The notes beneath the pieces are model-generated. The model was given only the letters and a program-made list of their open reading frames with translations. It had not been told where the DNA came from and ran no database searches. Source: Pelomyxa schiedti (taxonomy: Eukaryota; Protista; Evosea). From it: 53,920 nucleotides of DNA. Location of the stretch: the NCBI GenBank assembly GCA_020536535.1, contig JAHLWZ010000898.1, positions 1 through 53,920 on the forward strand. Reading direction: 5' to 3'. Shown here piece by piece: positions 6,824-18,538 of this stretch. A program made the translations under genes and the position numbers. Within the stretch, counting starts at the first letter, position 1, and each line of letters starts with the position of its first letter.

Positions 6824-7869
6824 ATGATGGGTAACGGATTATTGGACAAATGGCGGGGGTTGTTGCAGTGTGTGGCTCGTCGTGTTGTCTTCCTTGTTCC
6901 CTCGCATTGGTGAGTCGGTTTTCATCCCGTAATTGTGTGTAAAAGAACCTTTATTACTGTTTAATAGCTAAACATACGGCGTCAAACAACCATTAAAACA
7001 TACACTCAATCGATGACTTGGGAGAATGTGATACAAATAGGCTTATACTGTGCTTGGTGAAGGTTGCCCACTTGGTTCCATCATATTTCATTAGATGGTT
7101 CGGGCTACATTATCACGGAAAAGTACTCACTGAAAGCCAAGCCAAGGTTCTTCGTTGTTACAATGTACAACACTAAATTACAGAGGTTGAGAATTAGGCA
7201 CTTGCAATGTGTGACAAGCACATACACACACATAACCTGCCTGAGAGAGTTATACCTTATCCATTTGCCAGGAAGTTTGCACTCTACGGTCCTCCAGATA
7301 TTGCCGTTGTTCAGTGTGCCTGCAGGTTATCAAAGAGCAACCGTTGTCATCCAACAGAGGTTGTAAAGTACTCATAAAAACAAAAAAAAAATAAAAAAAA
7401 CAAAAAGGTTTGCCTGATTTTTGGGGAGCTGCTTATTCGCGGCTATGAAGCTCACCTTGGAGCCAAAAATGTAAGGCGCATATGCACGCAAGAAGCAGTT
7501 GCCATTATCGAATCAGAGCACAAAAAGGGGCACGTGCACTCCGCCTGGTTCAAGGACATTATGGGAGATGGGTTCTTTGCCTTGTGCAACTGCTGCAAAT
7601 GCTGCTGTGCCGGAATCGAGTCAATGGCATGCGGAGGCCAGACCATGGCATCCTCAGGGTTCGTTGCACAACGCACGGCATCCGAGAATTGCATTCTGTG
7701 TGGGAAGTGTGCTTCAATTTGTCCATTCCATGCCATTCAATTACATAGCTCTGGCCATGTGATTGACAGAAACAAGTGCCTTGGCTGTGGTGCATGTGTG
7801 TCACAGTGCCCCACAAAATGCATGAAATTGGCGAGGGACAAAACAAAAGGAGACCCCCTCTCCTTCTAG
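6824..7869 (+). CDS. Prokaryote-type 4Fe-4S dicluster (ferredoxin-domain) protein with CNCCxCCC motif
   Basis: Exons give HYHGKVL, VVQCACRLSKSNRCHP, CLIFG, GHVHSAWF, ALCNCCKCCCAG and two CxxCxxCxxxCP motifs (CILCGKCASICP, CLGCGACVSQCP). Several short introns. Confidence 0.85.
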
Positions 7870-8008
7870 TGTTATTCTTTTTCTTGTTTGGAAAAAAAAA
7901 GTTGTTATTGTTTATGGATTGGCATCCTTATTTCAGTCGACACAAAGGTACGTGATGGAGTGTGGTGTTGTGGAAAGGAAAAAGTCTACTTCTCCCACTC
8001 GACGAACT

Positions 8009-9124
8009 TTAATCGCCGCTCAGGTATAGTTTGGTCTTGAGGTGATTTGCCATAGTCACTGATACATCCAAACCAGCTTGTGCAGCTCGTGTGTAGAGTG
8101 ACAGAGCCTTCATTTCGTCCTTTGGTAAGTTCCACATACCCTCCATGTGGTAGGAGGCCAGATGATACATGGACTGTGCATCCCCTCTATCGGCAGCTTT
8201 TTGTTCATAAGCGATAGCTTTTTCCATGTCACACTCTACTCCGTCGCCAAAGTAGTAGGACTTGCCCAGCATAACCATGGCGTCAACACTGCCGGCTTCC
8301 GCAGCATCATGATACAGCGAAATGGCTTTTTCCTTGTCCACTGGGATGCAATCACCAACATCATACAGCTCCCCAAGATTGAACTTCGAGAGAGTACTTC
8401 CTCCATCCACAGCAGCTTGGAACAACAGAAACGCAATGAAAGGGTTCTTCTCAACACCAAGGCCATACTGGTGACAAACTCCAAGGTTGGTTGTTGCTTC
8501 AAGTTTCCCGGCATCAGAAGCCTTTTGAAAGAGCGGAACTGCTTTGGTTGCATCTGAAGCAACACCCAATCCTTTGAGGAAGCATATTGCGAGATTGTGA
8601 GTTGCACCAATGTGTCCAAGTGAAGCAGCCTTCTTGAAGCACTGGAATGCGGATTCCGGATCCGCTCTCACGCCAAGCCCGTCCTGATAACATTCACCAA
8701 CAGCGTTCAGAGAATTCGCGTCGCCAGTATCAGCAGCCATCTTGAAATAACGGAAGGCACTCTCCAGATCAGGACCTGAGAGACCGTAACCCTCTCTGAA
8801 GCACATCCCGAGCTTTTTCATTGTAGATGTGTCACCAGCTTCAGCCTTGACAATGAGTGCCGATAACGCAGCTTTGTCTTCGTGTCCCTTGCTCAGCGTT
8901 GAGTGAGGCAGAATCATTTGAGGTGGCATCGCTGCTGGCGTGCGAGGAATGATATGTGAAAGTGCGTAAAGATAGTCTGTCTCGTCGTGCATAAAAGTTT
9001 TCCGGAGTATCTGCTTTATTGGTAGACCGCCAAACACAGGGCGATTCTTCGCTGACACGTCAGATCTGGCGCCGGCGTGACTTTGGTCGTTGCGAGGTTT
9101 CTCACTTGCCGTGCTGCGTTTCAT
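8009..9124 (-). CDS. Sel1-like repeat (SLR) protein
   Basis: Single 371-aa ORF with about 7 repeats of A...G...A..NLG.CY..G.GV..D...A...F.KAA..G. Confidence 0.92.
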   Translation of the reverse strand: MKRSTASEKPRNDQSHAGARSDVSAKNRPVFGGLPIKQILRKTFMHDETDYLYALSHIIPRTPAAMPPQMILPHSTLSKGHEDKAALSALIVKAEAGDTSTMKKLGMCFREGYGLSGPDLESAFRYFKMAADTGDANSLNAVGECYQDGLGVRADPESAFQCFKKAASLGHIGATHNLAICFLKGLGVASDATKAVPLFQKASDAGKLEATTNLGVCHQYGLGVEKNPFIAFLLFQAAVDGGSTLSKFNLGELYDVGDCIPVDKEKAISLYHDAAEAGSVDAMVMLGKSYYFGDGVECDMEKAIAYEQKAADRGDAQSMYHLASYHMEGMWNLPKDEMKALSLYTRAAQAGLDVSVTMANHLKTKLYLSGD

Positions 9125-9666
9125 CGCGTCCTGAAGTCTATTGGTAGTCTTTGTTTATTGGCTCGGATCTGCTGTTATTGAGTACGCATTTACGGGAGAG
9201 GGTACGTGCGTACGTTGCTCCCTTGCTGCCGTGCGAATTTTTTTCAAAATGATTTCATCTCAACGTATGCTAGCTGAGCCAACTTAAACGATGTTATGTT
9301 TGTACCCTGGGCCAGACCTACCAGGCTCCCATGTGACACTAGTTCCCGGACCGACTAGGCCATGACCAAACGACAACAATAAATCTCCCACCTACGGCCA
9401 ACGACACCCGTTGCCTGCCCCTGATCTACAAACAAAAAAAACCTGTCTCCCGAGAAAACTCCTCAGAAATGAACACGGCAACAGAATCCCTTGAACCGGG
9501 TTGAATCACCACATGAACGGCTTGTTGCCTCGCTAGCTGGAACAGAGCTTTTTCTCAAAGTCCTTGTGACTTGTTGAAACGACTGGCAAAAACTTGCAGG
9601 AACTTGAGTCAGGCGACCAACGGAAATGGAATTTCCCTCGAAGCAACACAACGAAACGTCATCCCA

Positions 9667-12600
9667 ATGAGCAACGACCAGCCCAACTTGGCAGCTCCCC
9701 CTCTTGGTCCCGGGACCCCAGCCCTTTCCCCGGCCGTCCTTGCCCCCACCACAGGCGGCCCCCCGGCACACGGTGAGGAGCACGGGCGTGTCTCCGCCCA
9801 AGCAGACCCGTCCCCCAGCGCAGCAAAAGAGAGCGGAAGAAGCAGCGCGGGGTGGACTGGCGCATGCGGGTGCGTGTTCTGCAAGGAGAGGGAGAGGGAG
9901 AGGCTGGGCGCGGGGGCGGGGGCGGAGGCGGGGGAGGAGCTGACGGCTAATCCCATGAGGGTGCTGTTTTCCACTTCCAGGCTAAATGAGAGTAGTTTGG
10001 CAGATTGCCTTGGTTCTGTCAAGCAATTGCTAGCAAAGTTTGTTGCTTGGGTTCTTTCTTGATGCTTTTCTTACTTTTTTTTTTCTTTTTATTCTTTCCC
10101 GTATGCAGAGGTTACGAGAAGCTCCCACCCCTGCATGTTGTTCAGCTCAATAACGACCTTGTGACAATGGATAACCACTTGCTGTATGCAGTCCAATTTT
10201 TTTTTTTGCTCCCAATTATTTTGATTTACGCTCTCTAGGTACTGCTATAAAAAACTGTTCATCACAAGTGTTCCCATCGTCCTCCTCCCACCAAATGAGC
10301 GATTCATTAGCAAGGTGATGGGTGAGAAATCATTCCCCACACCCAAAGCTACGGAAACCATGGTGGAAACTGTTCGAACAACTTTGCCCACATTTACAGA
10401 GTGGTTTCTTACCCTTGTTACAAGGAATAGGTTTGCAGTATTAGATCCTTCACCACTGTAATATTTTTTTAAGAACTGCACCCATTTCAGAAATCCCGCA
10501 CTGCTTTCATAGTGCCGATCAGTATGTTTCTTCTCTGCTGGATGCCTTTGAAGTGGATTTCCTAGAAAACATACTCGTACCTATCCTTCAGTTTTCTCTT
10601 ATTTTTTTACCCTTGTGTAGATCAGTAAGAGTAAGGAAGCACTCTCCTTGCTTACTTTTGACCAAAAGAACTTGAAAGAATTGAGGGGTGACTATGAAAC
10701 AGTTCCCTGCCGCCAGATAGAAATCACTTCTGTAGAATCCAGCATGAGTCCAGGACTAAAATACTGTGACTTTGTGCTCTTTCAGCAGAATAAGTCTACT
10801 GTGAGCTGTGGTCTTGTAGTTGAATGCTACTCGGATAAACTGGATGACTCCCTGGATGAGGAGGAACAAACTCTCCATATACTTCGTTTAGTTGTCTTTC
10901 ACTGCCCATTATTGGGCAATCTTCAAGAATACCATTGCCTTCCCCCTTATCAATCACCCGACGTAAACATTGCAATTATTGCCAATATCATTGATTACCA
11001 AAGGTTATATGATGGGCTTAAGGAATTCAAAACTTGTAATTCAGAGCTGGTGGACCACATTTTGCACCCTCATATTCACGATATACTCTCTGGATGTTCT
11101 GATGTATGGGAACCTCGCCACGAGATGGGCAAGTTCAACAAGTTACAGAGGCAAGCAATCATGTACGCTATAGAAGAACCAGGAATAACCATTATCCAAG
11201 GTTTATATCCACCAGATTTTGTAAACCTTACTTTTCAAGGACCCCCTGGAACTGGTAAAACTAGTGTAGTTGTTGGCTTGGTTCTGGAACTCTTACTTCG
11301 AGAAAAGCGCGTTCTCATTTGCTCAACCTCAAATCCATCATTGAGTGAAATTATCACAAGAATCAAAGCGCAAGGAATTCGAGATCGTATGCTATTAATT
11401 CGGGGAGCTGAGAACCGTGATCCTTTGCATGATGATATAGCCTTCGATTTTCTAATGGACAGCCACTTATCATTGCACATCCTCAGCAATGAAATTCGGA
11501 AAGGTAAAAGTCATAAATGTGTACTTCCTCTCAGCCATTCCAGAAGAACCAAACATGCTCAAAGTCAATACTTTAAAAAAAGAACTAAAGCAAAAGATTA
11601 ACCGGTTGAATCCTGATCTTAGAGCCATTATGGGAGCAAGACTTGAGTTCATTAACTCCATACAGCTGAATTTGCCCGAGCGCCCTGCACTTCCAATGGA
11701 TACAGATTATGCTCCATTACCTCACTACACGAGTGGGGCACGACTTGTTTTTGCAACCACAAGCATGGTTGCATCTGGTGTTATGCATTCGGTTATGCAA
11801 AATGCACCTTCATTTGACATTGTAATTGTGGATGAAGCAGGCCACTGCACTGAGCAAGCCATTTTGTTACCACTAAAATATGCAACCAAACTAGTTTTAA
11901 TCGGAGACCCTCTGCAGTTGCCCCCACTTGTTGTAAGCCATGAAGCAAAGTAATCTCGTTCCTGTGATTTCTTCCCCTTTGTAATATCCCTGCAGGAGGG
12001 CTGCCTTCAACAGGTCAATGATGGAACGGTTAATTCAATCTGGCCACCATAACATACTCCTCAAAAAACAGTACAGAATGCATCCCTTGATCTGTGAATT
12101 CCCTTCCAGGTTGAACTATCTGTGTGTTTATTGACATAACATTGCCATAAGATTTTTTTATTCCAACTGCCTACAAAATGCTAAGTCTGTCAAATCCGAA
12201 ACTAAACCGTGGCATGCAGAACCTTTTTTCAAACCACTGGCTTTCTTTCAATTTCAAGGAAGGGAGTTGCTTGACCCATCAGGGTCCATAACCAATCCAA
12301 AGGAAGCCGAGATTGTGAACTTCTTACTTGGATCTTGGATGAAGAGATACCCCACAGCAACAAATCTTGGAGTAATCACACCCTACAAAAAGCAAGCAGA
12401 ACTGTTGGAAGGGAAGCTCGGATACAGATGTGAGGTTTCTTCTGTGGATGCCTTTCAAGGTAGAGAAAAGGATGTTATCATTGTGAGCACTGTTCGCAGT
12501 AATACATCCCAAATACTTGGATTTGTTGGTGAGAACCACAGGTTAAATGTCCTTCTTACCAGAGCAAAGTACAGCCTCTGGATTGTAGGCAACTCGTGCA

Positions 12601-15600
12601 CCCTTGCAAGTCACCCAATTTGGAATGCTCTTATCAAGCACTGCAAGGCTAAGGGATGCTTTTTCGATTATGAGCAACTGAGAGAAGGCATGAAAATTCC
12701 TCGGAAAGTTAGTGAGCGCATTGGAGAAGAAGTTGTTGACCTTTCAAGCTTGAGTAATATATGGAGGTTTGTAATCTTACCAAATAACCGGCCTGGTGAC
12801 TAACTTGTGTTTAGGATTAAAGTAGATGGCGAACTTGTAAGATCTCTAGGGAGCCTTGATACTGTGGCCAGGACAAAATTAGTCCAGATGGTGCGTAAAC
12901 TGGCATCCGGTCAATGGCCAAAACATGAGGTGTTGTTACAAAACAGGGATAATGACCCTCTCAACTCCGTCATTCATGTTTCAAAGCTAGCTGCTGACTT
13001 GTTACTTGTCTGGAGGCTTGATGTAATGAGACACACCGAGAGTCTACAGCAAATACTCACTCTGTTTCGTCTGATTCCGCCGAGTGAATTACACAATACC
13101 TTCTGCAAACTTAAAACTATCATCAACGCCGAGGCTAAGGTCAACTTGATATCTGTACAGCTAATGTGTGAGGGTGTACGCTCTGAAGGAACCCAAAAAG
13201 TCCCGAAAGTATGGTCTGAGGAGGAACTGCGACTTTTACAACGACCCCCAGAATGTGCAATCCCTGAAGAAACATGTACACCCACCAAGTATTACAACGT
13301 TTCTAAGGACTTCCTGCAAGAACTTCTTTCAGGATCTCCAGGAAAGCTTCACCTTGTATTGCACCCAGAAGAAGTTTCTGTAATAGAAAGAGCCAAGTCC
13401 GTCTTCATCTGTGGGCGTTCAGGCACAGGAAAGACAACAATTTTGTTGTATAGGATGCTTAACCACAAGCAACAAGCTGGAGATAGAAACATAAAGCAAA
13501 TCTTCCTGTCAAAATCTTCAATGCTTTGCGCTCATGCTAAAGCAGAGATTATGGCTTTGCTTGGTCTTTCCAATCAAGACAATGTTCCAATTCTTGACGA
13601 GATTGAGCAACAGTATTTCACTTGTCAAAATACTGTTCCCATAACCTCCTTGAAAGAGAACCACTTTCCTCTTTTTGTATCCTGCAGGCAATTGCTGAAC
13701 ATGATTGATATGTCCTTGGATACAAAGTTCTATATGAGTAAAACTTCTACTCCAACAGTAAATCAAACTGCAACAAAAAAATCACACCCCAAATATAAGT
13801 CGGGATCTGGATCTGTCATCACACCTAAAACAGCAGGACCAGCACCTCCACAAAAAACAAAATTACCCCAAGTAGGCACATCGCTAAAATCAGGGCCTTC
13901 AGGCAAACCAGTTTCATCCCAAAGACAAGTTACCTCCACTCAAACGACCTTGCCTCCTCGGAATTTCAGTGAGGAACAACTTCAAACTATCAACCCTAGG
14001 CTTGCCACAGTGTTAACCCCTGATGACATTTCAGATGACGCATTTAACACAGCTCGTTCGGTTAGCTCTGCTGTGCCTCTGGACACTCAGCAAAGAAGAG
14101 AGTTTGAAAGCCGTGAAGTAGAGTTTAGCGACTTTGCAAGAGACTACTGGCCAGGTTTTGATGAAAAGCTCAAGAACGGAATTTCTGATGTATCTTTCTT
14201 TTTCGTTTCCTCAGCTGACTCATTTCACAGGCCAAACTTTGGGTGGAAATTCACAGTCACATTAAAGGAGTACTAGATACCAATGGTTTGGACACCTACG
14301 TACTGTCGCAAGAGCAATATGAGAGGCTTGGCAGAGGTGATTTGATAGGAACATCCCCTGACAAAGTGTACAAACTCTTCAAGAAATATGAGGAAGTGAA
14401 ATCTAGAAAAGGTGCTTGGGATGAAACCGACTTCGTCATTTATCTACATAAACAGCTTTCAGAATATAGTCGTAACAAACGGTCTCATTCGGTGTTGAAT
14501 ATGAGATTTGATGAGATCTATGTAGATGAAGTGCAGGATTGTAGCATGATACAGCTTTCTCTTTTCAAATTTTTGTGCACAAATACTGCTGGCTACTCCT
14601 TTGCTGGCGACACAGCACAAACTATCCACTGCGGGGTTGACTTCAAATTTGAACGAGTATGTTTGACCACCCAGTTCCCGATAACTAACCACCATTTTAA
14701 GTTGAAGGACACATTCTTCGATATTGTTCACAGATCCCGTGCGGATGCTCCAAAAGTTGTCGATGAACTTTATAAGAACTACCGCACTCACATACAAATA
14801 TGTGAACTGGCAAATTCACTCACAAGTCTTGTGCAAAGATACTTCCCTGATTTTATTGACTTCATGAGACCTGAGCAGACGATGTGGAAGGGACCAATCC
14901 CTGTATTTCTCAATGCAACGTTGCACTCCTTGTCAGATCACTTCAGGTTTTTGGCCCGAGATATGAGTATTGCCTTTGGTTGCAAGCAGGTTGTACTAGT
15001 TCGAAATGATGATGCAAAGGCAAGACTTAAGAGGATGCACCCAAATCTGGGATCTGGCATTGTAATGACAATCACGGAATCAAAGGGACTGGAGTTTCAA
15101 GATGTCCTACTATATGATTTTTGGAAAGATTCTTGTGCCTCCTCAAACACTTGGAGGCTTCTCTGTGGACTTCTGGGAACGGAAGGCGTGCCGAAATTTG
15201 ATGTTAAGAAACATCATGTTCTTTGCTCGGAATTGAAGCACCTTTATACTGCTGTAACGCGTACAAGAAAACTACTTATCATGGTTGACGAGGACCAGCA
15301 AAAACATGAACCGCTCCTCTCTTTTTGGAAAACAAAGGAATTCATCAGTGTACAGGATGCGCTGTCAGAAGAGCAGAAAGGCATTTTGGCTGAAGATTCT
15401 TCCACCTTGCCCACAGAGTGGTGTCACAAAGCGGCAGTTCTCATGCAAAACAAAATGTACACACAAGCAGCTGTGTGCTACGAGAGAGGTGGGGATCTGG
15501 CAATGAGGGATAGAGCTCACGGGATGGAATTGATCACAGAATGGAAGACAACTGGAGATATGAGTAAGCTTGAAATGGCAGAAAACACATTTTCCCAACT

Positions 15601-18538
15601 TGGTCTTCTTTCACATGTGGTCTGGTGCCAAAATAAAGTAAAGAAATGGGCTGAAGCAGGGAAAACCTATCAACTGATGGGAAATATAAAGGAAGCAAAA
15701 AGAAATTACCTTCATGCAAAGAGACCCGATCTCTGCTTTGACATGTTGTGTGAGGTTGAAAGCGAAAATTCTGGTCTTTCCTTTGCCACAGATATTATTG
15801 AAAATCACAACTATTCACCAGCGATGATAGACAACTTGCGGTATAAAACAGTGTGTGTACTGAAACGCCACCCAGAGTTCGTCGATTCCCATGCTTCCAC
15901 GCGGGAAATTATAAGACACTGTGCCATTAGTTGGGTAACAGAGAACGAAACTGAAAAGTTACGAGACCTATTACCCTTGTGGAAGCGTGATCAGACACAG
16001 TTTCTCATAAGACATCAACAAACGGAGTTGCTGAGTGAACTTACTTCAACATTTAAAAACCTCAAAGGGCAAGTGAGCCCTGAAATGGTGGCCAAGATAA
16101 TGGCGAAGAAGGGTGACTGGAAAAATGCATCCCATTTTTACCAACTGGCAGCACAAATATCATCACAGGATACCCAAAAAACTCACTGTTCCCTCTTAGC
16201 GCTTCACTATTCCCAAATGTATGCCGATTTCTGCTATTGTGAGGACGCCAACGAGGAGAGGTATTTCTCAAGACTTCAGGAAATGGAAGAACAAGCCAGA
16301 GCGTGGAACGTTCTTCCCAAATACCTGGAAATCAAGTTGATTCAATTGGCAAAAAAAATTCTGGTAATGCCTATACAGACGCTGCAATTAGAATTGCTGG
16401 AGCTCAAAAGTAAAGTTCCACAAGATAATCTGTTTCTCTCAAAATTTGTGGCCGATATTTCATATACTCTCCTTACTCTGACAAGAGTGAACAATCCTGC
16501 ACTCCCTCTTAGAAACCTGGAAGAGTGGGAGGCCTGGGTACAGGTTACACTTCAGCTTATTGGAGGAATGCATGCCAAACATTCTTCGGGAGTTCAAACA
16601 GCTGAATGCACAGCCGGAATGAGATATGCAGGTATTTATAGTAACTGTCAAGGGGACTATAAGTCTTTGTACTTTTCTATCGGAAAGCCAACTTCATTTG
16701 GAACTAGTTTTGCAGATATTGATCCCTCATTCCTCCATGGGGAAAAATTCTCCGGAGTTTTGAAGACACTTGGTAAAGGAGATATGGAACAGATCTCAAA
16801 AATTCTTTCTCCTACGTACAGCAGCAAGCAGCAGTGCGCGAAGCAATACTGCCAGTTTTGGGGAGAAATTCTCCTTTGTGATGCACAGAAGTACCTTTCA
16901 GTTTTACGAGGATGTGACGTTGACACTTTGATCTCTATAGGTCAAAACCTTTTTAGGTTGTGCTGCCAATTGAAGACTGCATGCAATTGCATTTCTCCAA
17001 TTAAAGTAGATCAGTTTCGAGCCAAAGTTGAGAGTTGTATCAATAGTAAAATTGGTGATCTCTGGGTACAACATGCGTCGCAAAGTATTGTGCCCTATAA
17101 ATTATTTTTCCTCGCCTATGCCCGGGATCTCTGGTCAACATCTCTTCTGACACAAGATTCCTTCACTGCATACCAAATCGTAGATCTTCTTGGCGAGCAT
17201 AATCTTCTTGCAAAATGGACACAAACCAGTGATTCACCGGACTCACCAGTGAAGTCATCACTGCGTTCCCTTTGTGAATCACTTTCTAGCACTCTCATGA
17301 CACCCGGGAAGTGGCCAAAAATATTCCAATCAATGGTCAGCATACTTAAGGAAACCTTTAAGGGAGGTCACTCAACTCTCCCGTGGGTAGAAATTTCATG
17401 CTGTTTGCCAATGAGCAATTGGATGCTCTTCGCGGAAGTTGCTGTTGTCAGTGCCTTGTGCACATTATCGCAGTACCACAATGTGTTCCTACCAAAGAAA
17501 ATGTTCTTCAACGCAATGAACCATTGCAAGTATTCACTACCGCAACTACAGGTGTGTGAAGCATTCAGCCAAGCTGACGAGGTTCTTTTGTTACCACTAG
17601 AGGCACTAACAATGACTCTTTCACGGTGTAAAACTCAATACGTGCCTTTTGCGGATATATGGGGCTTGATAAAACTGGCTCTCGTATCTGTCATTAATAT
17701 CAAGCCGCCGTATGGACAGGATAGCGCAAACGTTGCATTTGGGAAAAAACTTTATGAATACATGCCCAGACTTGAATTGCTGGAACTTGAACGTGGACAG
17801 GATAAACACACGACAATCTCACCTCTGATCTGTGCCATTGCAAATCAACAACCTACTACGTTGCACTGGAAAGTGAAAGAGCTGTGCTTTGAATTATATA
17901 GTGATGAAAGTGATAGGCTATTCTGCCTTTGTGACAGACGGGATCCCAAATTGGCAACTTTACCTCTCAATCTCCAACCCCAGTGTGTAATTACTTGGCC
18001 CCGGGGTGCCAATCTTCTCCAGCTTGCTTGCACACAATTCGGGGAAAAGATAAGCTCACACATGAACATTTCCATTGTAAAACGCAACTCAAGCCAGCCC
18101 AACCAATCTCCACAACAGCCTCCCCAGCCGAAACCGCTTAGCACCACTGACTTTCACCACAACCTCATACTTGTAAACCAACCCCCAACAACAGAACAAG
18201 AACAACCTCAAGAACCCGCGCAATTGGAGGCCAATATCCTTCAATCAGAACTTCGTTACTCTCTCCCCAAAACTCCTGAAACTGAATCCTACATCAAGGA
18301 ATTCCTCCTTCTCATCCCGCGCAAGCCAGAACTCATAGAACAAAACCTATCACTCCACAAGACACTATCTACACTCACGGATATCTTTGAGAGGGACAAG
18401 ATGTTGCAGTCAGTTCACAACCTGGAACTTTGCATACAATTCCTCAACCTGGATCCCGAGGCACTTCACCTTCACCCTGATAACGAAACACTGGAACTTG
18501 TCAGACAAGAAGTCACCAAGCTACCCAACACGACCTAA
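9667..18538 (+). CDS. Giant TRANK1-like double SF1 helicase: ParB/Srx-like N-domain, UPF1/DNA2/NAM7-like helicase, RelE-like linker domain, UvrD-like helicase, TPR-like repeats, helical C-terminus
   Basis: SF1B motifs: FNKLQRQAI, IQ|GPPGTGKT, IVDEAG, LIGDPLQLPP, QYRMHP, GVITPY, SVDAFQGREKD, RLNVLLTRAK. UvrD/TRANK1 motifs: GRSGTGKTT, YVDEVQD, FAGDTAQTI, LYKNYRTH, ESKGLEF, ELKHLYTAVTRTR, then YTQAAVCYERGG-type TPR. The modules are joined across a short intron at about 12768-12814 with no intervening stop. Confidence 0.88.

What the first reader, a model, noticed from the sequence alone, without database searches (positions are those of the whole stretch)
9667..18538. One polypeptide with two SF1 helicases, a RelE-like module and TPRs: candidate cell-autonomous anti-nucleic-acid defence protein
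Seen: complete motif sets for a UPF1/NAM7-type helicase and a UvrD/TRANK1-type helicase are joined in one spliced frame, followed by TPR-like repeats and a long helical tail. Known: the second module's signatures (GRSGTGKTT, ELKxLYxAxTR) are those of animal TRANK1 and of plant NAM7+UvrD fusions, whose function is poorly defined. UPF1-like helicases such as ZNFX1 and MOV10 act against viruses and transposons. Inference: 5'->3' and 3'->5' motors bracketing a putative nuclease fold, with TPR sensors, resemble prokaryotic helicase-nuclease conflict systems. This could be an uncharacterised eukaryotic immune effector in an anaerobic protist.
Basis: partly seen in the sequence, partly recalled or inferred. 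Interest (0 to 1): 0.8.

Follow-up and report, generated by a model that had tools for sequence, protein, structure and literature searches.

The report
Expressed double-helicase gene with RelE-fold domain
This amoeba gene really does encode one giant protein with two different helicase motors, a toxin-shaped (RelE-fold) domain between them and a TPR array, but the same design occurs in plants, algae, early fungi and other protists, so it is a new member of an old, unstudied family whose role in defence is untested.

Summary
cDNA contigs from two runs give seven short GT-AG introns. One of them (12767-12814) removes the only stop between the two helicases. The 12-exon model reads as one 2785-codon frame. 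It matches the public model KAH3744837.1 (Pelomyxa schiedti, 2768 aa), which wrongly drops 17 residues.

Both helicases keep full motif sets. One is UPF1-like (AAA_11/AAA_12) and one is UvrD-like. The domain between them folds as RelE/ParE: 25 toxin chains rank first among 48,161, at Z 8.0-4.6. No sequence-level link to RelE was found, and no canonical catalytic residues could be mapped by eye. A TPR solenoid follows (pLDDT 89), then a tail of about 760 aa with no relative among the proteins fetched.

The design is not specific to this protist. The same colinear design occurs in land plants, green algae, Rozella, chytrids, Mucoromycota, a chrysophyte, Mastigella and two Pelomyxa paralogues. 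RelE-fold + UvrD + TPR is the conserved core. A Mastigella relative adds a Cid1-type nucleotidyltransferase, which points to RNA.

An immune role is plausible but untested. The earlier notes I saw record no member of this family on other DNA.

The parts
9667..18538 (+). Whole gene: 12 exons, 2785 codons plus stop. It equals public KAH3744837.1 (P0121) except for 17 residues that the public model drops.
9667..10037 (+). Exon 1: GC-rich, low-complexity N-terminus. Taken from the public model only; there is no RNA cover and no relative.
10122..10254 (+). Short conserved N-terminal motif (PPLHVV...MDNHLLYCYKK), split by predicted intron 10184-10238. It is shared with both Pelomyxa paralogues and Mastigella, so coding extends upstream of ATG 10318.
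10474..11130 (+). Region before the helicase core, with an IPxxFxSxxxY motif. It may be a 1B/DUF6469-like barrel, but only weak leads support that.
   Evidence: no significant DUF6469 match; atlas lead at 0.84
11131..12596 (+). UPF1-like SF1B helicase core: AAA_11 at 11131-11938 and AAA_12 at 12009-12596, with motifs I-VI intact. It is interrupted by introns 11201-11239, 11504-11543, 11950-11995 and 12110-12151.
11201..11239 (+). 39-nt intron that splits the Walker A codons. The position is conserved in both paralogues, whose public models misread it.
12767..12814 (+). 48-nt GT-AG intron with a CTAAC branch site. It removes the TAA at 12801-12803 and joins the two halves in frame. It is seen in cDNA contigs from two runs.
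12816..13145 (+). RelE/ParE-fold domain (model residues 908-1017), with topology beta-alpha-alpha-beta-beta-beta-alpha.
13146..13412 (+). Conserved linker and N-terminal extension leading into the UvrD P-loop.
13413..15271 (+). UvrD-like SF1A helicase, from motif I (GRSGTGKTT) to motif VI (LYTAVTRTRK). It includes an S/T/P/K-rich insert at 13734-13979 and introns 14190-14230 and 14657-14701.
14411..14461 (+). 51 nt (17 codons) that the public gene model removes as an intron. The cDNA contigs keep it and Mastigella aligns to it, so it is coding.
15410..16231 (+). TPR-type alpha-solenoid. The modelled stretch (P0121:1690-2010, slightly wider than these coordinates) has about 20 helices. It is conserved in the paralogues, Mastigella and Klebsormidium.
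16259..18535 (+). C-terminal tail of about 760 aa. The frame is open. No relative was detected, even in the paralogues, and there is no Pfam family.

Best explanation
SHOWN. This is a real, transcribed and spliced 12-exon gene of Pelomyxa schiedti. It encodes one protein of about 2785 aa. From N- to C-terminus it has a low-complexity start, a short conserved motif, a UPF1-like (SF1B) helicase, a RelE/ParE-fold domain, a UvrD-like (SF1A) helicase, a TPR solenoid and a tail with no detected relative. It belongs to an ancient family found in several eukaryotic supergroups. The invariant core of that family is RelE-fold + UvrD-like helicase + TPR. This core is usually preceded by a UPF1-like helicase, and in some lineages also by a Cid1-type terminal nucleotidyltransferase.

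INFERRED. The protein is most likely an ATP-driven RNA surveillance or RNA-degradation-coupling machine.
- The two motors belong to classes that move in opposite directions on a strand: 5'->3' for SF1B and 3'->5' for SF1A. In one chain they could travel the same way along the two strands of a duplex, or hold one strand from both sides, as RecBCD does with RecD and RecB.
- The RelE-fold domain sits at the junction, where it could bind, and perhaps cut, the RNA that is exposed, or dock on ribosomes.
- The TPR array and the fast-changing tail would recruit partners or targets.

It is not resolved whether the usual targets are foreign RNAs (viruses, transposons) or faulty cellular RNAs.
For: Transcript and frame.

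Domains and intact motifs.

Public identity: KAH3744837.1, Pelomyxa schiedti.

RelE/ParE fold: the AF2 model has block-mean pLDDT of 77-92 over residues 1-110, apart from one loop (residues 31-50, 48-68) and the last block (72). The top Foldseek hits are nearly all RelE, YoeB, YafQ or ParE. VIA-align gives Z 7-8.4 at rmsd 2.3-2.8 A over 75-95 residues. In the Foldseek-independent scan of 48,161 chains the first 25 are all this superfamily, and unrelated folds begin at Z 4.6.

Family: the same colinear design of 2.6-2.9 thousand aa occurs in angiosperms, a gymnosperm, ferns, a lycophyte, a moss, Klebsormidium, chlorophytes, Rozella, Jimgerdemannia, chytrids and the chrysophyte Epipyxis. A profile of the RelE-fold domain finds it in all of these. 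It also finds it in UvrD-only proteins of Penicillium, Ascobolus, Diversispora and two chytrids.

RNA link: the Mastigella eilhardi relative P0519 carries MTPAP-like and PAP_assoc domains ahead of the same modules. Metagenomic P0289 carries the same two domains plus zf-CCHC.

Precedent: CnuH, a UPF1-like helicase with a RelE-fold RTL domain, in CoCoNuT systems predicted to target RNA (PMC11090510).

The opposite polarity of SF1A and SF1B motors, and the RecBCD analogy, rest on established helicase knowledge and were not tested here.
Against: No biochemical or genetic data exist for any member found in the paper library.

The RelE-fold domain has no sequence-level link to RelE. There is no Pfam toxin family, no PDB sequence hit with the profile, and hhalign against an E. 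coli RelE-clade profile gives probability 0.4%. By eye, the RelE positions R61, R81 and Y87 have no counterparts. The family-invariant or near-invariant residues are L29, Q79, D69, G32, P35 and K36. The domain may therefore be a non-catalytic binding module, like ParE, which has this fold without RNase activity.

UvrD-like and Sen1-like helicases also act on DNA and R-loops, so a DNA substrate is not excluded.

Motif II of helicase 1 reads DEAGH where relatives have Q.
Confidence: 0.6

Rival explanations
1. This is a dedicated innate-immune effector. The TPR array and tail sense foreign nucleic acid or a pathogen protein. The two motors engage it. The RelE-fold domain acts as an endonuclease that destroys the invader's RNA or shuts down translation, in the manner of abortive infection.
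For: The domain logic parallels prokaryotic helicase-nuclease systems, and CnuH pairs a UPF1-like helicase with a RelE-fold domain.

Pelomyxa has three fused paralogues at only 27-33% identity, plus two tandem UvrD-only copies. The window copy has the longest branch in its clade, 1.39. The tail has no relative, even in the paralogues.

Plant relatives carry neighbouring locus numbers on the same contig, which suggests tandem arrays.

Animal TRANK1 is on an ISG list and is among the first genes induced by influenza in chicken ileum (PMC6880163; PMC8517014).
Against: No functional test was made. The family is ancient and, within plants, the tree largely tracks plant relationships, which fits a conserved cellular role as well. 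Nuclease residues could not be mapped. The neighbouring genes give no defence-island signal; upstream lies a Sel1-repeat gene. TRANK1 was never compared directly.
Confidence: 0.22
2. This is a DNA-directed enzyme, for example a resolver of R-loops or replication-transcription conflicts, or a repair helicase. On this reading a Sen1-like motor and a UvrD-like motor work on DNA, and the RelE fold is only a structural spacer.
For: NCBI names the protein 'tRNA-splicing endonuclease positive effector', a Sen1-type name, and names a paralogue 'PcrA'. UvrD, Rep and PcrA are DNA helicases, and UPF1-like helicases can use ssDNA (stated in PMC11090510).
Against: No Sen1 N-terminal domain or other DNA-repair domain was found. 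Relatives are fused to RNA-tailing enzymes. The RelE fold is known from ribosome-dependent and RNA-directed toxins and, as ParE, from gyrase poisons, but not as a spacer. It is kept as a recognisable profile domain across distant lineages.
Confidence: 0.13
3. The fusion is an artefact: two neighbouring genes joined by gene prediction or by contig assembly, or a pseudogene broken by the stop at 12801.
For: There is an in-frame TAA at 12801-12803 in the genomic sequence. The read-laying tool warns that a contig across two genes does not prove one transcript.
Against: The TAA lies inside a 48-nt GT-AG intron with a CTAAC branch site. That intron is spliced out in cDNA contigs from two runs, and splicing restores the frame exactly. 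Removing it gives a gap-free alignment to Mastigella. An independent Mastigella transcript and dozens of plant, algal and fungal proteins carry the same colinear fusion.
Confidence: 0.02
4. It is the single-copy housekeeping orthologue of a known helicase such as SETX/Sen1 or UPF1.
For: AAA_11 and AAA_12 are the same Pfam families as in UPF1 and Sen1. NCBI gives it a Sen1-type name.
Against: It is multi-copy in this genome. It carries a second, UvrD-type helicase, a RelE-fold domain and TPRs that UPF1 and Sen1 lack. No UPF1 zinc-knuckle domain or Sen1 N-terminal domain was found. Its nearest relatives are the plant and fungal fusions.
Confidence: 0.02

Closest known systems
Plant, algal and early-fungal fusions of UPF1-like and UvrD-like helicases, filed as 'UvrD-like helicase ATP-binding domain-containing protein' or 'TPR and ankyrin repeat-containing protein 1-like' (for example Amborella XP_020524975.1 and the Klebsormidium 'tRNA-splicing endonuclease positive effector')
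   Same: The order is colinear: UPF1-like helicase, RelE-fold domain, UvrD-like helicase, TPR. Lengths are similar (2.7-2.9 thousand aa). The helicase-2 signatures are identical (GRSGTGKTT, DEVQD, GDTAQTI, CSELKxLY..TR). Alignable parts are 26-33% identical, in some members out to P0121 residue 1990.
   Different: Pfam DUF6469 is not detectable in the window protein. The first exon is low complexity. About 760 aa of tail has no counterpart. Motif II of helicase 1 reads DEAGH. No member has a studied function.
Animal TRANK1 (TPR and ankyrin repeat-containing protein 1)
   Same: NCBI names plant and fungal relatives after it, which implies that the UvrD-like helicase plus TPR part is its best named match. 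Its function is unknown, and it is induced by virus or interferon in expression studies.
   Different: No ankyrin repeats were found here. As far as I recall, TRANK1 has no UPF1-like helicase. No TRANK1 sequence was retrieved, so neither the signatures nor a RelE-fold domain in TRANK1 was checked.
RelE/ParE/HigB/YoeB/YafQ toxins, and the RelE-like domain of the CRISPR-associated Cami1
   Same: The fold and topology match over nearly the whole toxin, with Z up to 8.4 at rmsd 2.3-2.8 A.
   Different: There is no sequence-level similarity and no antitoxin partner. The domain is embedded in a giant eukaryotic protein. The canonical RelE residues R61, R81 and Y87 are not apparent. Other residues are conserved instead: Q79 and L29 invariant, D69, G32, P35 and K36 near-invariant.
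[quoted passage not shown]
   Same: A UPF1-like SF1 helicase is fused to a RelE-fold domain. That domain is recognisable only by structure and its activity is uncertain. RNA targeting is predicted.
   Different: In CnuH the RTL domain lies N-terminal to the helicase and works alongside McrBC-type GTPases and HEPN nucleases. Here it lies after the UPF1-like helicase and is bound evolutionarily to a UvrD-like helicase. Common descent is not shown.
RecBCD and AddAB (bipolar helicase-nuclease complexes)
   Same: They combine an SF1A motor and an SF1B motor with a nuclease-type module. This is the model for how two motors of opposite polarity can work together (established knowledge).
   Different: Those are multi-subunit bacterial DNA enzymes with a PD-(D/E)xK nuclease. 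No homology beyond the SF1 cores is claimed. The substrate here is inferred to be RNA.
UPF1, Sen1/SETX, MOV10 and ZNFX1 (eukaryotic UPF1-like helicases)
   Same: The AAA_11/AAA_12 core and its motif set.
   Different: The window protein has no CH zinc domain, Sen1 N-terminal domain or NFX1 zinc fingers. It carries a second helicase, a RelE fold and TPRs.

Membership tests
UPF1-like SF1B helicases (Pfam AAA_11 + AAA_12) | Both Pfam domains score above the curated cut-off | tested here: met
   AAA_11 134 bits and AAA_12 192 bits on P0121, cut-off 27. The exon-by-exon hits agree.
UPF1-like SF1B helicases (Pfam AAA_11 + AAA_12) | Motifs I, Ia, II, III, IV, V and VI are intact | tested here: met
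   The only deviation is DEAGH in place of DEAxQ.
UPF1 proper / Sen1 proper | UPF1 CH zinc-knuckle domain or Sen1 N-terminal domain | tested here: not met
   Neither family appears among the Pfam hits at E<=0.001.
UvrD/Rep/PcrA-like SF1A helicases | Pfam UvrD-helicase and UvrD_C-type domains score above cut-off | tested here: met
   UvrD-helicase 52.1 bits (cut-off 23) and UvrD_C_2 29.5 bits (cut-off 27.4).
UvrD/Rep/PcrA-like SF1A helicases | Motifs I-VI are intact | tested here: met
Eukaryotic family of UPF1-like helicase + RelE fold + UvrD-like helicase + TPR fusions ('TRANK1-like' of plants and fungi) | Colinear alignment across both helicases and the linker | tested here: met
Eukaryotic family of UPF1-like helicase + RelE fold + UvrD-like helicase + TPR fusions ('TRANK1-like' of plants and fungi) | Family-specific interdomain (RelE-fold) profile | tested here: met
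   The HMM built from A2 hits P0121 at 4.5e-25, but P0121 is one of the sequences the HMM was built from, so that hit is circular. It also hits Klebsormidium, algae, Rozella, chytrids and Epipyxis, which are not in the HMM.
Eukaryotic family of UPF1-like helicase + RelE fold + UvrD-like helicase + TPR fusions ('TRANK1-like' of plants and fungi) | N-terminal DUF6469 | tested here: inconclusive
   No Pfam hit, and a plant-derived HMM gives E=0.2-0.4. The only support is a language-model lead at score 0.84 to DUF6469, ZNFX1 and 1B clusters.
Eukaryotic family of UPF1-like helicase + RelE fold + UvrD-like helicase + TPR fusions ('TRANK1-like' of plants and fungi) | TPR-type solenoid after the UvrD core | tested here: met
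   AF2 pLDDT 89. The top Foldseek hits are OGT, LGN, IFT-A and consensus TPR proteins, at E down to 9e-5.
Animal TRANK1 | Ankyrin repeats | tested here: not met
   No Ank family among the Pfam hits.
Animal TRANK1 | Direct sequence or profile similarity to TRANK1 | not tested
   No TRANK1 sequence was returned. It lies outside the length range and was not among the 120 proteins listed.
RelE/ParE toxin superfamily | Fold and topology | tested here: met
RelE/ParE toxin superfamily | Sequence-family match (Pfam ParE_toxin and related families, or profile against profile) | tested here: not met
   (hhalign probability 0.4%). The RelE profile used was narrow (Neff 1.9).
RelE/ParE toxin superfamily | Catalytic residues of RelE-type RNases | tested here: inconclusive
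   Only a by-eye register from secondary structure was possible. R61, R81 and Y87 have no obvious equivalents. A basic residue (H or K) is common in strand 2. I had no coordinates for a structural superposition.
RelE/ParE toxin superfamily | Cognate antitoxin | not tested
   The domain is internal to a 2785-aa protein. No search for an antitoxin-like partner was made.

The most novel reading that the evidence does not exclude
The RelE-fold + UvrD-like + TPR core, with or without the UPF1-like motor, is an ancient eukaryotic RNA-targeting defence or surveillance effector. Its RelE-fold domain is an active, possibly ribosome-dependent, endonuclease that the two opposite-polarity motors deliver to the target. 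Animal TRANK1 would be its derived vertebrate member. This would link bacterial toxin-type RNases to eukaryotic innate immunity.
Probability: 0.15. Interest if true: 0.85.

Novelty: new member of a known kind. Interest (0 to 1): 0.55.

Why it matters
The gene itself is already in GenBank under a generic name, and its two-helicase design is visible in Pfam annotations of many plant proteins. So the fusion is neither new nor special to this protist.

This analysis adds three things.
- The linker that Pfam leaves blank is a conserved RelE/ParE-fold domain. It travels with the UvrD-like helicase across eukaryotic supergroups.
- Relatives recruit an RNA-tailing enzyme, which points to RNA as the substrate.
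- A bacterial precedent exists, CnuH.

I found no paper on any of this for eukaryotes in the library searched. If the domain is active, the family would be a eukaryotic use of a toxin-type RNase fold. That would give a concrete hypothesis for the unknown function of TRANK1-like proteins, which could be tested in mosses, Penicillium or chytrids.

Tried and rejected
1. Alternative start at ATG 10318. Rejected: residues encoded at 10122-10254 are conserved in both paralogues and in Mastigella.

2. DUF6469 in the N-terminal exons. Pfam at E<=10 gives nothing and a plant-derived HMM gives E>=0.2.

3. Sequence link between the interdomain region and RelE. None found: no PF05016 match in the whole genome, no PDB hit with profile A1, and hhalign of A2 against an E. 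coli RelE-clade alignment gives probability 0.4%.

4. A PDB sequence search with the large exon found nothing.

5. Apparent loss of the Walker A motif in the paralogue models P0122 and P0123. Rejected as a gene-model error: the DNA encodes GPPGTGKT and GSPGAGKT once the conserved 39-nt intron is removed.

6. Relatives of the tail. None among the fetched proteins, and no usable atlas hit.

7. Pfam on the conserved N-terminal motif region gave nothing. My impression that it resembles ParB/Srx is from memory only.

8. TRANK1. No sequence could be brought in, and papers linking TRANK1 with UvrD or RelE number zero.

9. dN/dS was not attempted, because the paralogues are about 30% identical and therefore saturated.

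10. The careful tree search did not finish in time. The quick tree (SH-aLRT support only) is reported.

11. Joined model. My own joined cDNA model was built only inside scripts. It was used for the frame check and coordinate mapping, for a comparison with the public protein, and for one local BLAST against already-fetched proteins. It was never sent to a search tool. Database searches used single exons by reference, or the public protein P0121 that a tool returned.

Full report
WHAT IS THERE

Six-frame translation of 9.4-18.8 kb shows a chain of open stretches on the + strand. Scanned exon by exon by reference, they carry these Pfam families:
- AAA_11, in two pieces (8e-13 and 9e-21)
- AAA_12 (1.5e-41)
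- UvrD-helicase (7.9e-11)
- weak UvrD_C and TPR matches

TRANSCRIPT EVIDENCE

Four public runs from one sample hold the stretch. When laid on 9500-15400, X1 and X2 behave as DNA, with unspliced contigs. X3 and X4 behave as cDNA: their contigs carry a template-switch oligo tail and skip seven short GT-AG introns (coordinates refined):
- 11201-11239
- 11504-11543
- 11950-11995
- 12110-12151
- 12767-12814
- 14190-14230
- 14657-14701

The fifth intron contains the TAA at 12801-12803, the only stop between the two helicase halves. It has a CTAAC branch site, and removing it keeps the frame. One X4 contig runs from 12216 to 14814, that is from AAA_12 through the junction to beyond motif III of helicase 2. 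One X3 contig runs from 10701 to 13353. With these introns the frame is open from 10621 to the stop at 18536-18538.

The two cDNA runs give no cover over 9500-10700. The 5' end therefore rests on the public gene model and on conservation.

IDENTITY

A profile-free scan of 1.84 billion representative proteins with the exon 12816-14189 returned a 100% match, P0121. This is KAH3744837.1, 'tRNA-splicing endonuclease positive effector [Pelomyxa schiedti]', 2768 aa, on a 53,920-bp contig. That confirms the species named in earlier notes of this scan. The genome comes from single-cell genomics and transcriptomics (PMC8887013).

It uses the introns I had predicted at 10431-10473 and 10577-10620, plus 10038-10108 and 10184-10238. 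It differs from the cDNA-based model in one place: it removes 51 nt (14411-14461, 17 residues). The cDNA contigs keep those bases and Mastigella aligns to them. The corrected protein has 2785 residues.

I first favoured a start at ATG 10318. I dropped that idea because residues 128-176 of P0121 are conserved in both paralogues and in Mastigella. Exon 1 (9667-10037) is GC-rich and low complexity, and it remains unverified.

THE TWO MOTORS

On P0121, AAA_11, AAA_12 and UvrD-helicase all exceed the curated cut-offs. An alignment with the paralogues, plants, Klebsormidium, Rozella and Jimgerdemannia shows every SF1 motif in place in both modules. The only oddity is DEAGH where relatives have DEAxQ.

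The public models of the two paralogues seemed to lack Walker A. The DNA shows intact GPPGTGKT and GSPGAGKT once the conserved 39-nt intron, at the same position as 11201-11239, is removed.

THE DOMAIN BETWEEN THE MOTORS

The 182 residues encoded at 12816-13361 align colinearly with the equivalent linker of plant proteins. An AlphaFold model built on that alignment is confident for residues 1-110 apart from one loop. Its topology is beta-alpha-alpha-beta-beta-beta-alpha. Three structure comparisons agree:
- Foldseek's best matches are nearly all RelE, YoeB, YafQ or ParE toxins. Probabilities are 0.85-1.0 and E-values are weak.
- VIA-align gives Z 7-8.4 at rmsd 2.3-2.8 A over 75-95 residues, with all of the first 48 rows from this superfamily.
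- A Foldseek-independent scan of 48,161 chains puts 25 members of the superfamily first (Z 8.0-4.6). Unrelated folds follow from Z 4.6 and fall to 2.9 by rank 50.

The fold assignment is therefore sound. Homology at sequence level is not shown:
- no Pfam toxin family
- no PF05016 match anywhere in the genome
- no PDB sequence hit with the profile
- hhalign probability 0.4% against a profile of the E. coli RelE clade

By a secondary-structure register, the RelE residues R61, R81 and Y87 have no counterparts. The conserved positions are different: L29 and Q79 are invariant, and D69, G32, P35 and K36 are near-invariant. Whether the domain cuts RNA is open.

THE C-TERMINAL HALF

P0121:1690-2010 was modelled with 13 relatives. 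It gives pLDDT 89 and about 20 short helices. Its best structural matches are TPR proteins: OGT, LGN, IFT-A, consensus TPRs and alpha-SNAP.

Similarity to the paralogues, Mastigella and Klebsormidium ends near residue 1990. The last 760 residues or so have no relative among roughly 400 fetched proteins, no Pfam family and no usable atlas hit. I did not test whether the tail is helical.

THE FAMILY

A word search with the large exon, and then with P0121 over its whole length, finds hundreds of proteins with the same Pfam order and a similar length. They come from:
- land plants: angiosperms, Cryptomeria, ferns, Selaginella and Ceratodon
- green algae and charophytes: Klebsormidium, Closterium, Chlamydomonas eustigma and Cymbomonas
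- fungi: Rozella, Jimgerdemannia and chytrids

Epipyxis, a chrysophyte, has the design too.

A profile of the RelE-fold domain detects it in all fused members. It also detects it in proteins that lack the UPF1-like helicase, from Penicillium, Ascobolus, Diversispora and two chytrids. It does not detect it in basidiomycete copies or in the Pelomyxa UvrD-only copies. The constant core is therefore RelE fold + UvrD-like helicase + TPR.

The own genome holds two more full fusions: C359 (KAH3763650.1) and C858 (KAH3745789.1). They are 27-33% identical to the window protein. There are also two tandem UvrD-only genes on C436.

In a quick maximum-likelihood tree of the UvrD core, the three Pelomyxa fusions and Mastigella form a clade (SH-aLRT 99). 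The window copy sits on the longest branch (1.39). The plant sequences largely follow plant relationships. The careful search did not finish.

A POINTER TO RNA

The Mastigella eilhardi isoform P0519 (2537 aa) carries a Cid1-type nucleotidyltransferase (MTPAP-like central and PAP_assoc domains) ahead of the same modules: AAA_11, AAA_12, RelE fold, UvrD and TPR. It is 37-38% identical to the window protein over the shared parts. Metagenomic P0289 has the same nucleotidyltransferase domains plus a zf-CCHC.

In bacteria, the CoCoNuT helicase CnuH is a UPF1-like helicase with a RelE/colicin-D-fold domain. That domain is recognised only by structure, and the system is predicted to target RNA (PMC11090510).

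MECHANISM (INFERRED)

SF1B motors move 5'->3' and SF1A motors move 3'->5'; this is established knowledge. Joined in one chain they could act like RecBCD, with each motor on one strand of a duplex and both moving the same way. Alternatively they could grip a single strand from both sides. The RelE fold at the junction would then meet the displaced strand, or a ribosome. The TPR array and the variable tail would bind partners.

Taken together, the RNA-tailing fusions, the UPF1-like motor and the RelE fold favour RNA surveillance or degradation. I put this at about 0.6. A dedicated immune role is a narrower version of the same idea (about 0.2). A DNA role is possible (about 0.13).

LITERATURE

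I found no paper in the library on TRANK1 together with UvrD or RelE, and none on DUF6469. The one paper found on 'TPR and ankyrin repeat-containing' proteins in plants was unrelated. TRANK1 appears mainly in gene and expression lists. It is on an ISG list (PMC6880163). It is one of three genes induced 12 h after influenza infection in chicken ileum (PMC8517014).

LIMITS
- All runs come from one sample and were available only as contigs.
There the public model and the open frame agree.
- TRANK1 was never retrieved.
- No coordinates were available for a residue-level superposition.
- My own joined model was used only inside scripts and was not sent to any search tool.

Noticed in passing
window 14411-14461: The public gene model KAH3744837.1 splices out 51 nt (17 codons). 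The cDNA contigs of two runs keep these bases and Mastigella aligns to them. The deposited protein is therefore 17 residues short.
   Followed up: yes
L008:3150-3200 (G000:C359) and L011:2380-2430 (G000:C858): The public models of both paralogues misread the conserved 39-nt intron in the Walker A codons, so their proteins seem to lack the P-loop. The DNA encodes GPPGTGKT and GSPGAGKT.
   Followed up: yes
P0519 (Mastigella eilhardi transcript, residues 16-292); also P0289: Relatives carry an N-terminal Cid1-type poly(A)/uridylyl-transferase fused to the same double-helicase protein. P0289 also has a zf-CCHC.
   Followed up: partly
window 10122-10254: A short motif (PPLHVV..., then DN(H/R)(L/R)LYC(Y/F)K) is conserved in all Archamoebae copies, ahead of the helicase. 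It has no Pfam family. It reminds me of ParB/sulfiredoxin-type motifs, but that is from memory only.
   Followed up: partly
L010 (G000:C436:2287-4288 and 7503-9505, minus strand): Two tandem copies of a UvrD-only relative (KAH3762722.1, named PcrA). They have no detectable UPF1-like helicase or RelE-fold domain.
   Followed up: partly
window 8009-9124 (-): The divergent upstream neighbour is an intron-free Sel1-repeat protein (Pfam Sel1, 7 repeats, 4.9e-54).
   Followed up: partly
window 9878-9942, 10084, 10339, 10626, 12659: A simple repeat was skipped by the read tool. DNA run X2 shows an 8-nt deletion in predicted intron 1 and two base differences. One cDNA contig has an extra T after 12659. 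These are probably alleles or amplification and assembly errors in single-cell data.
   Followed up: no
(plant relatives): Many plant relatives have neighbouring locus numbers on the same contig (Linum perenne, Persea americana, Pterospermum, Erythranthe, Chlamydomonas eustigma). This suggests tandem gene clusters.
   Followed up: no
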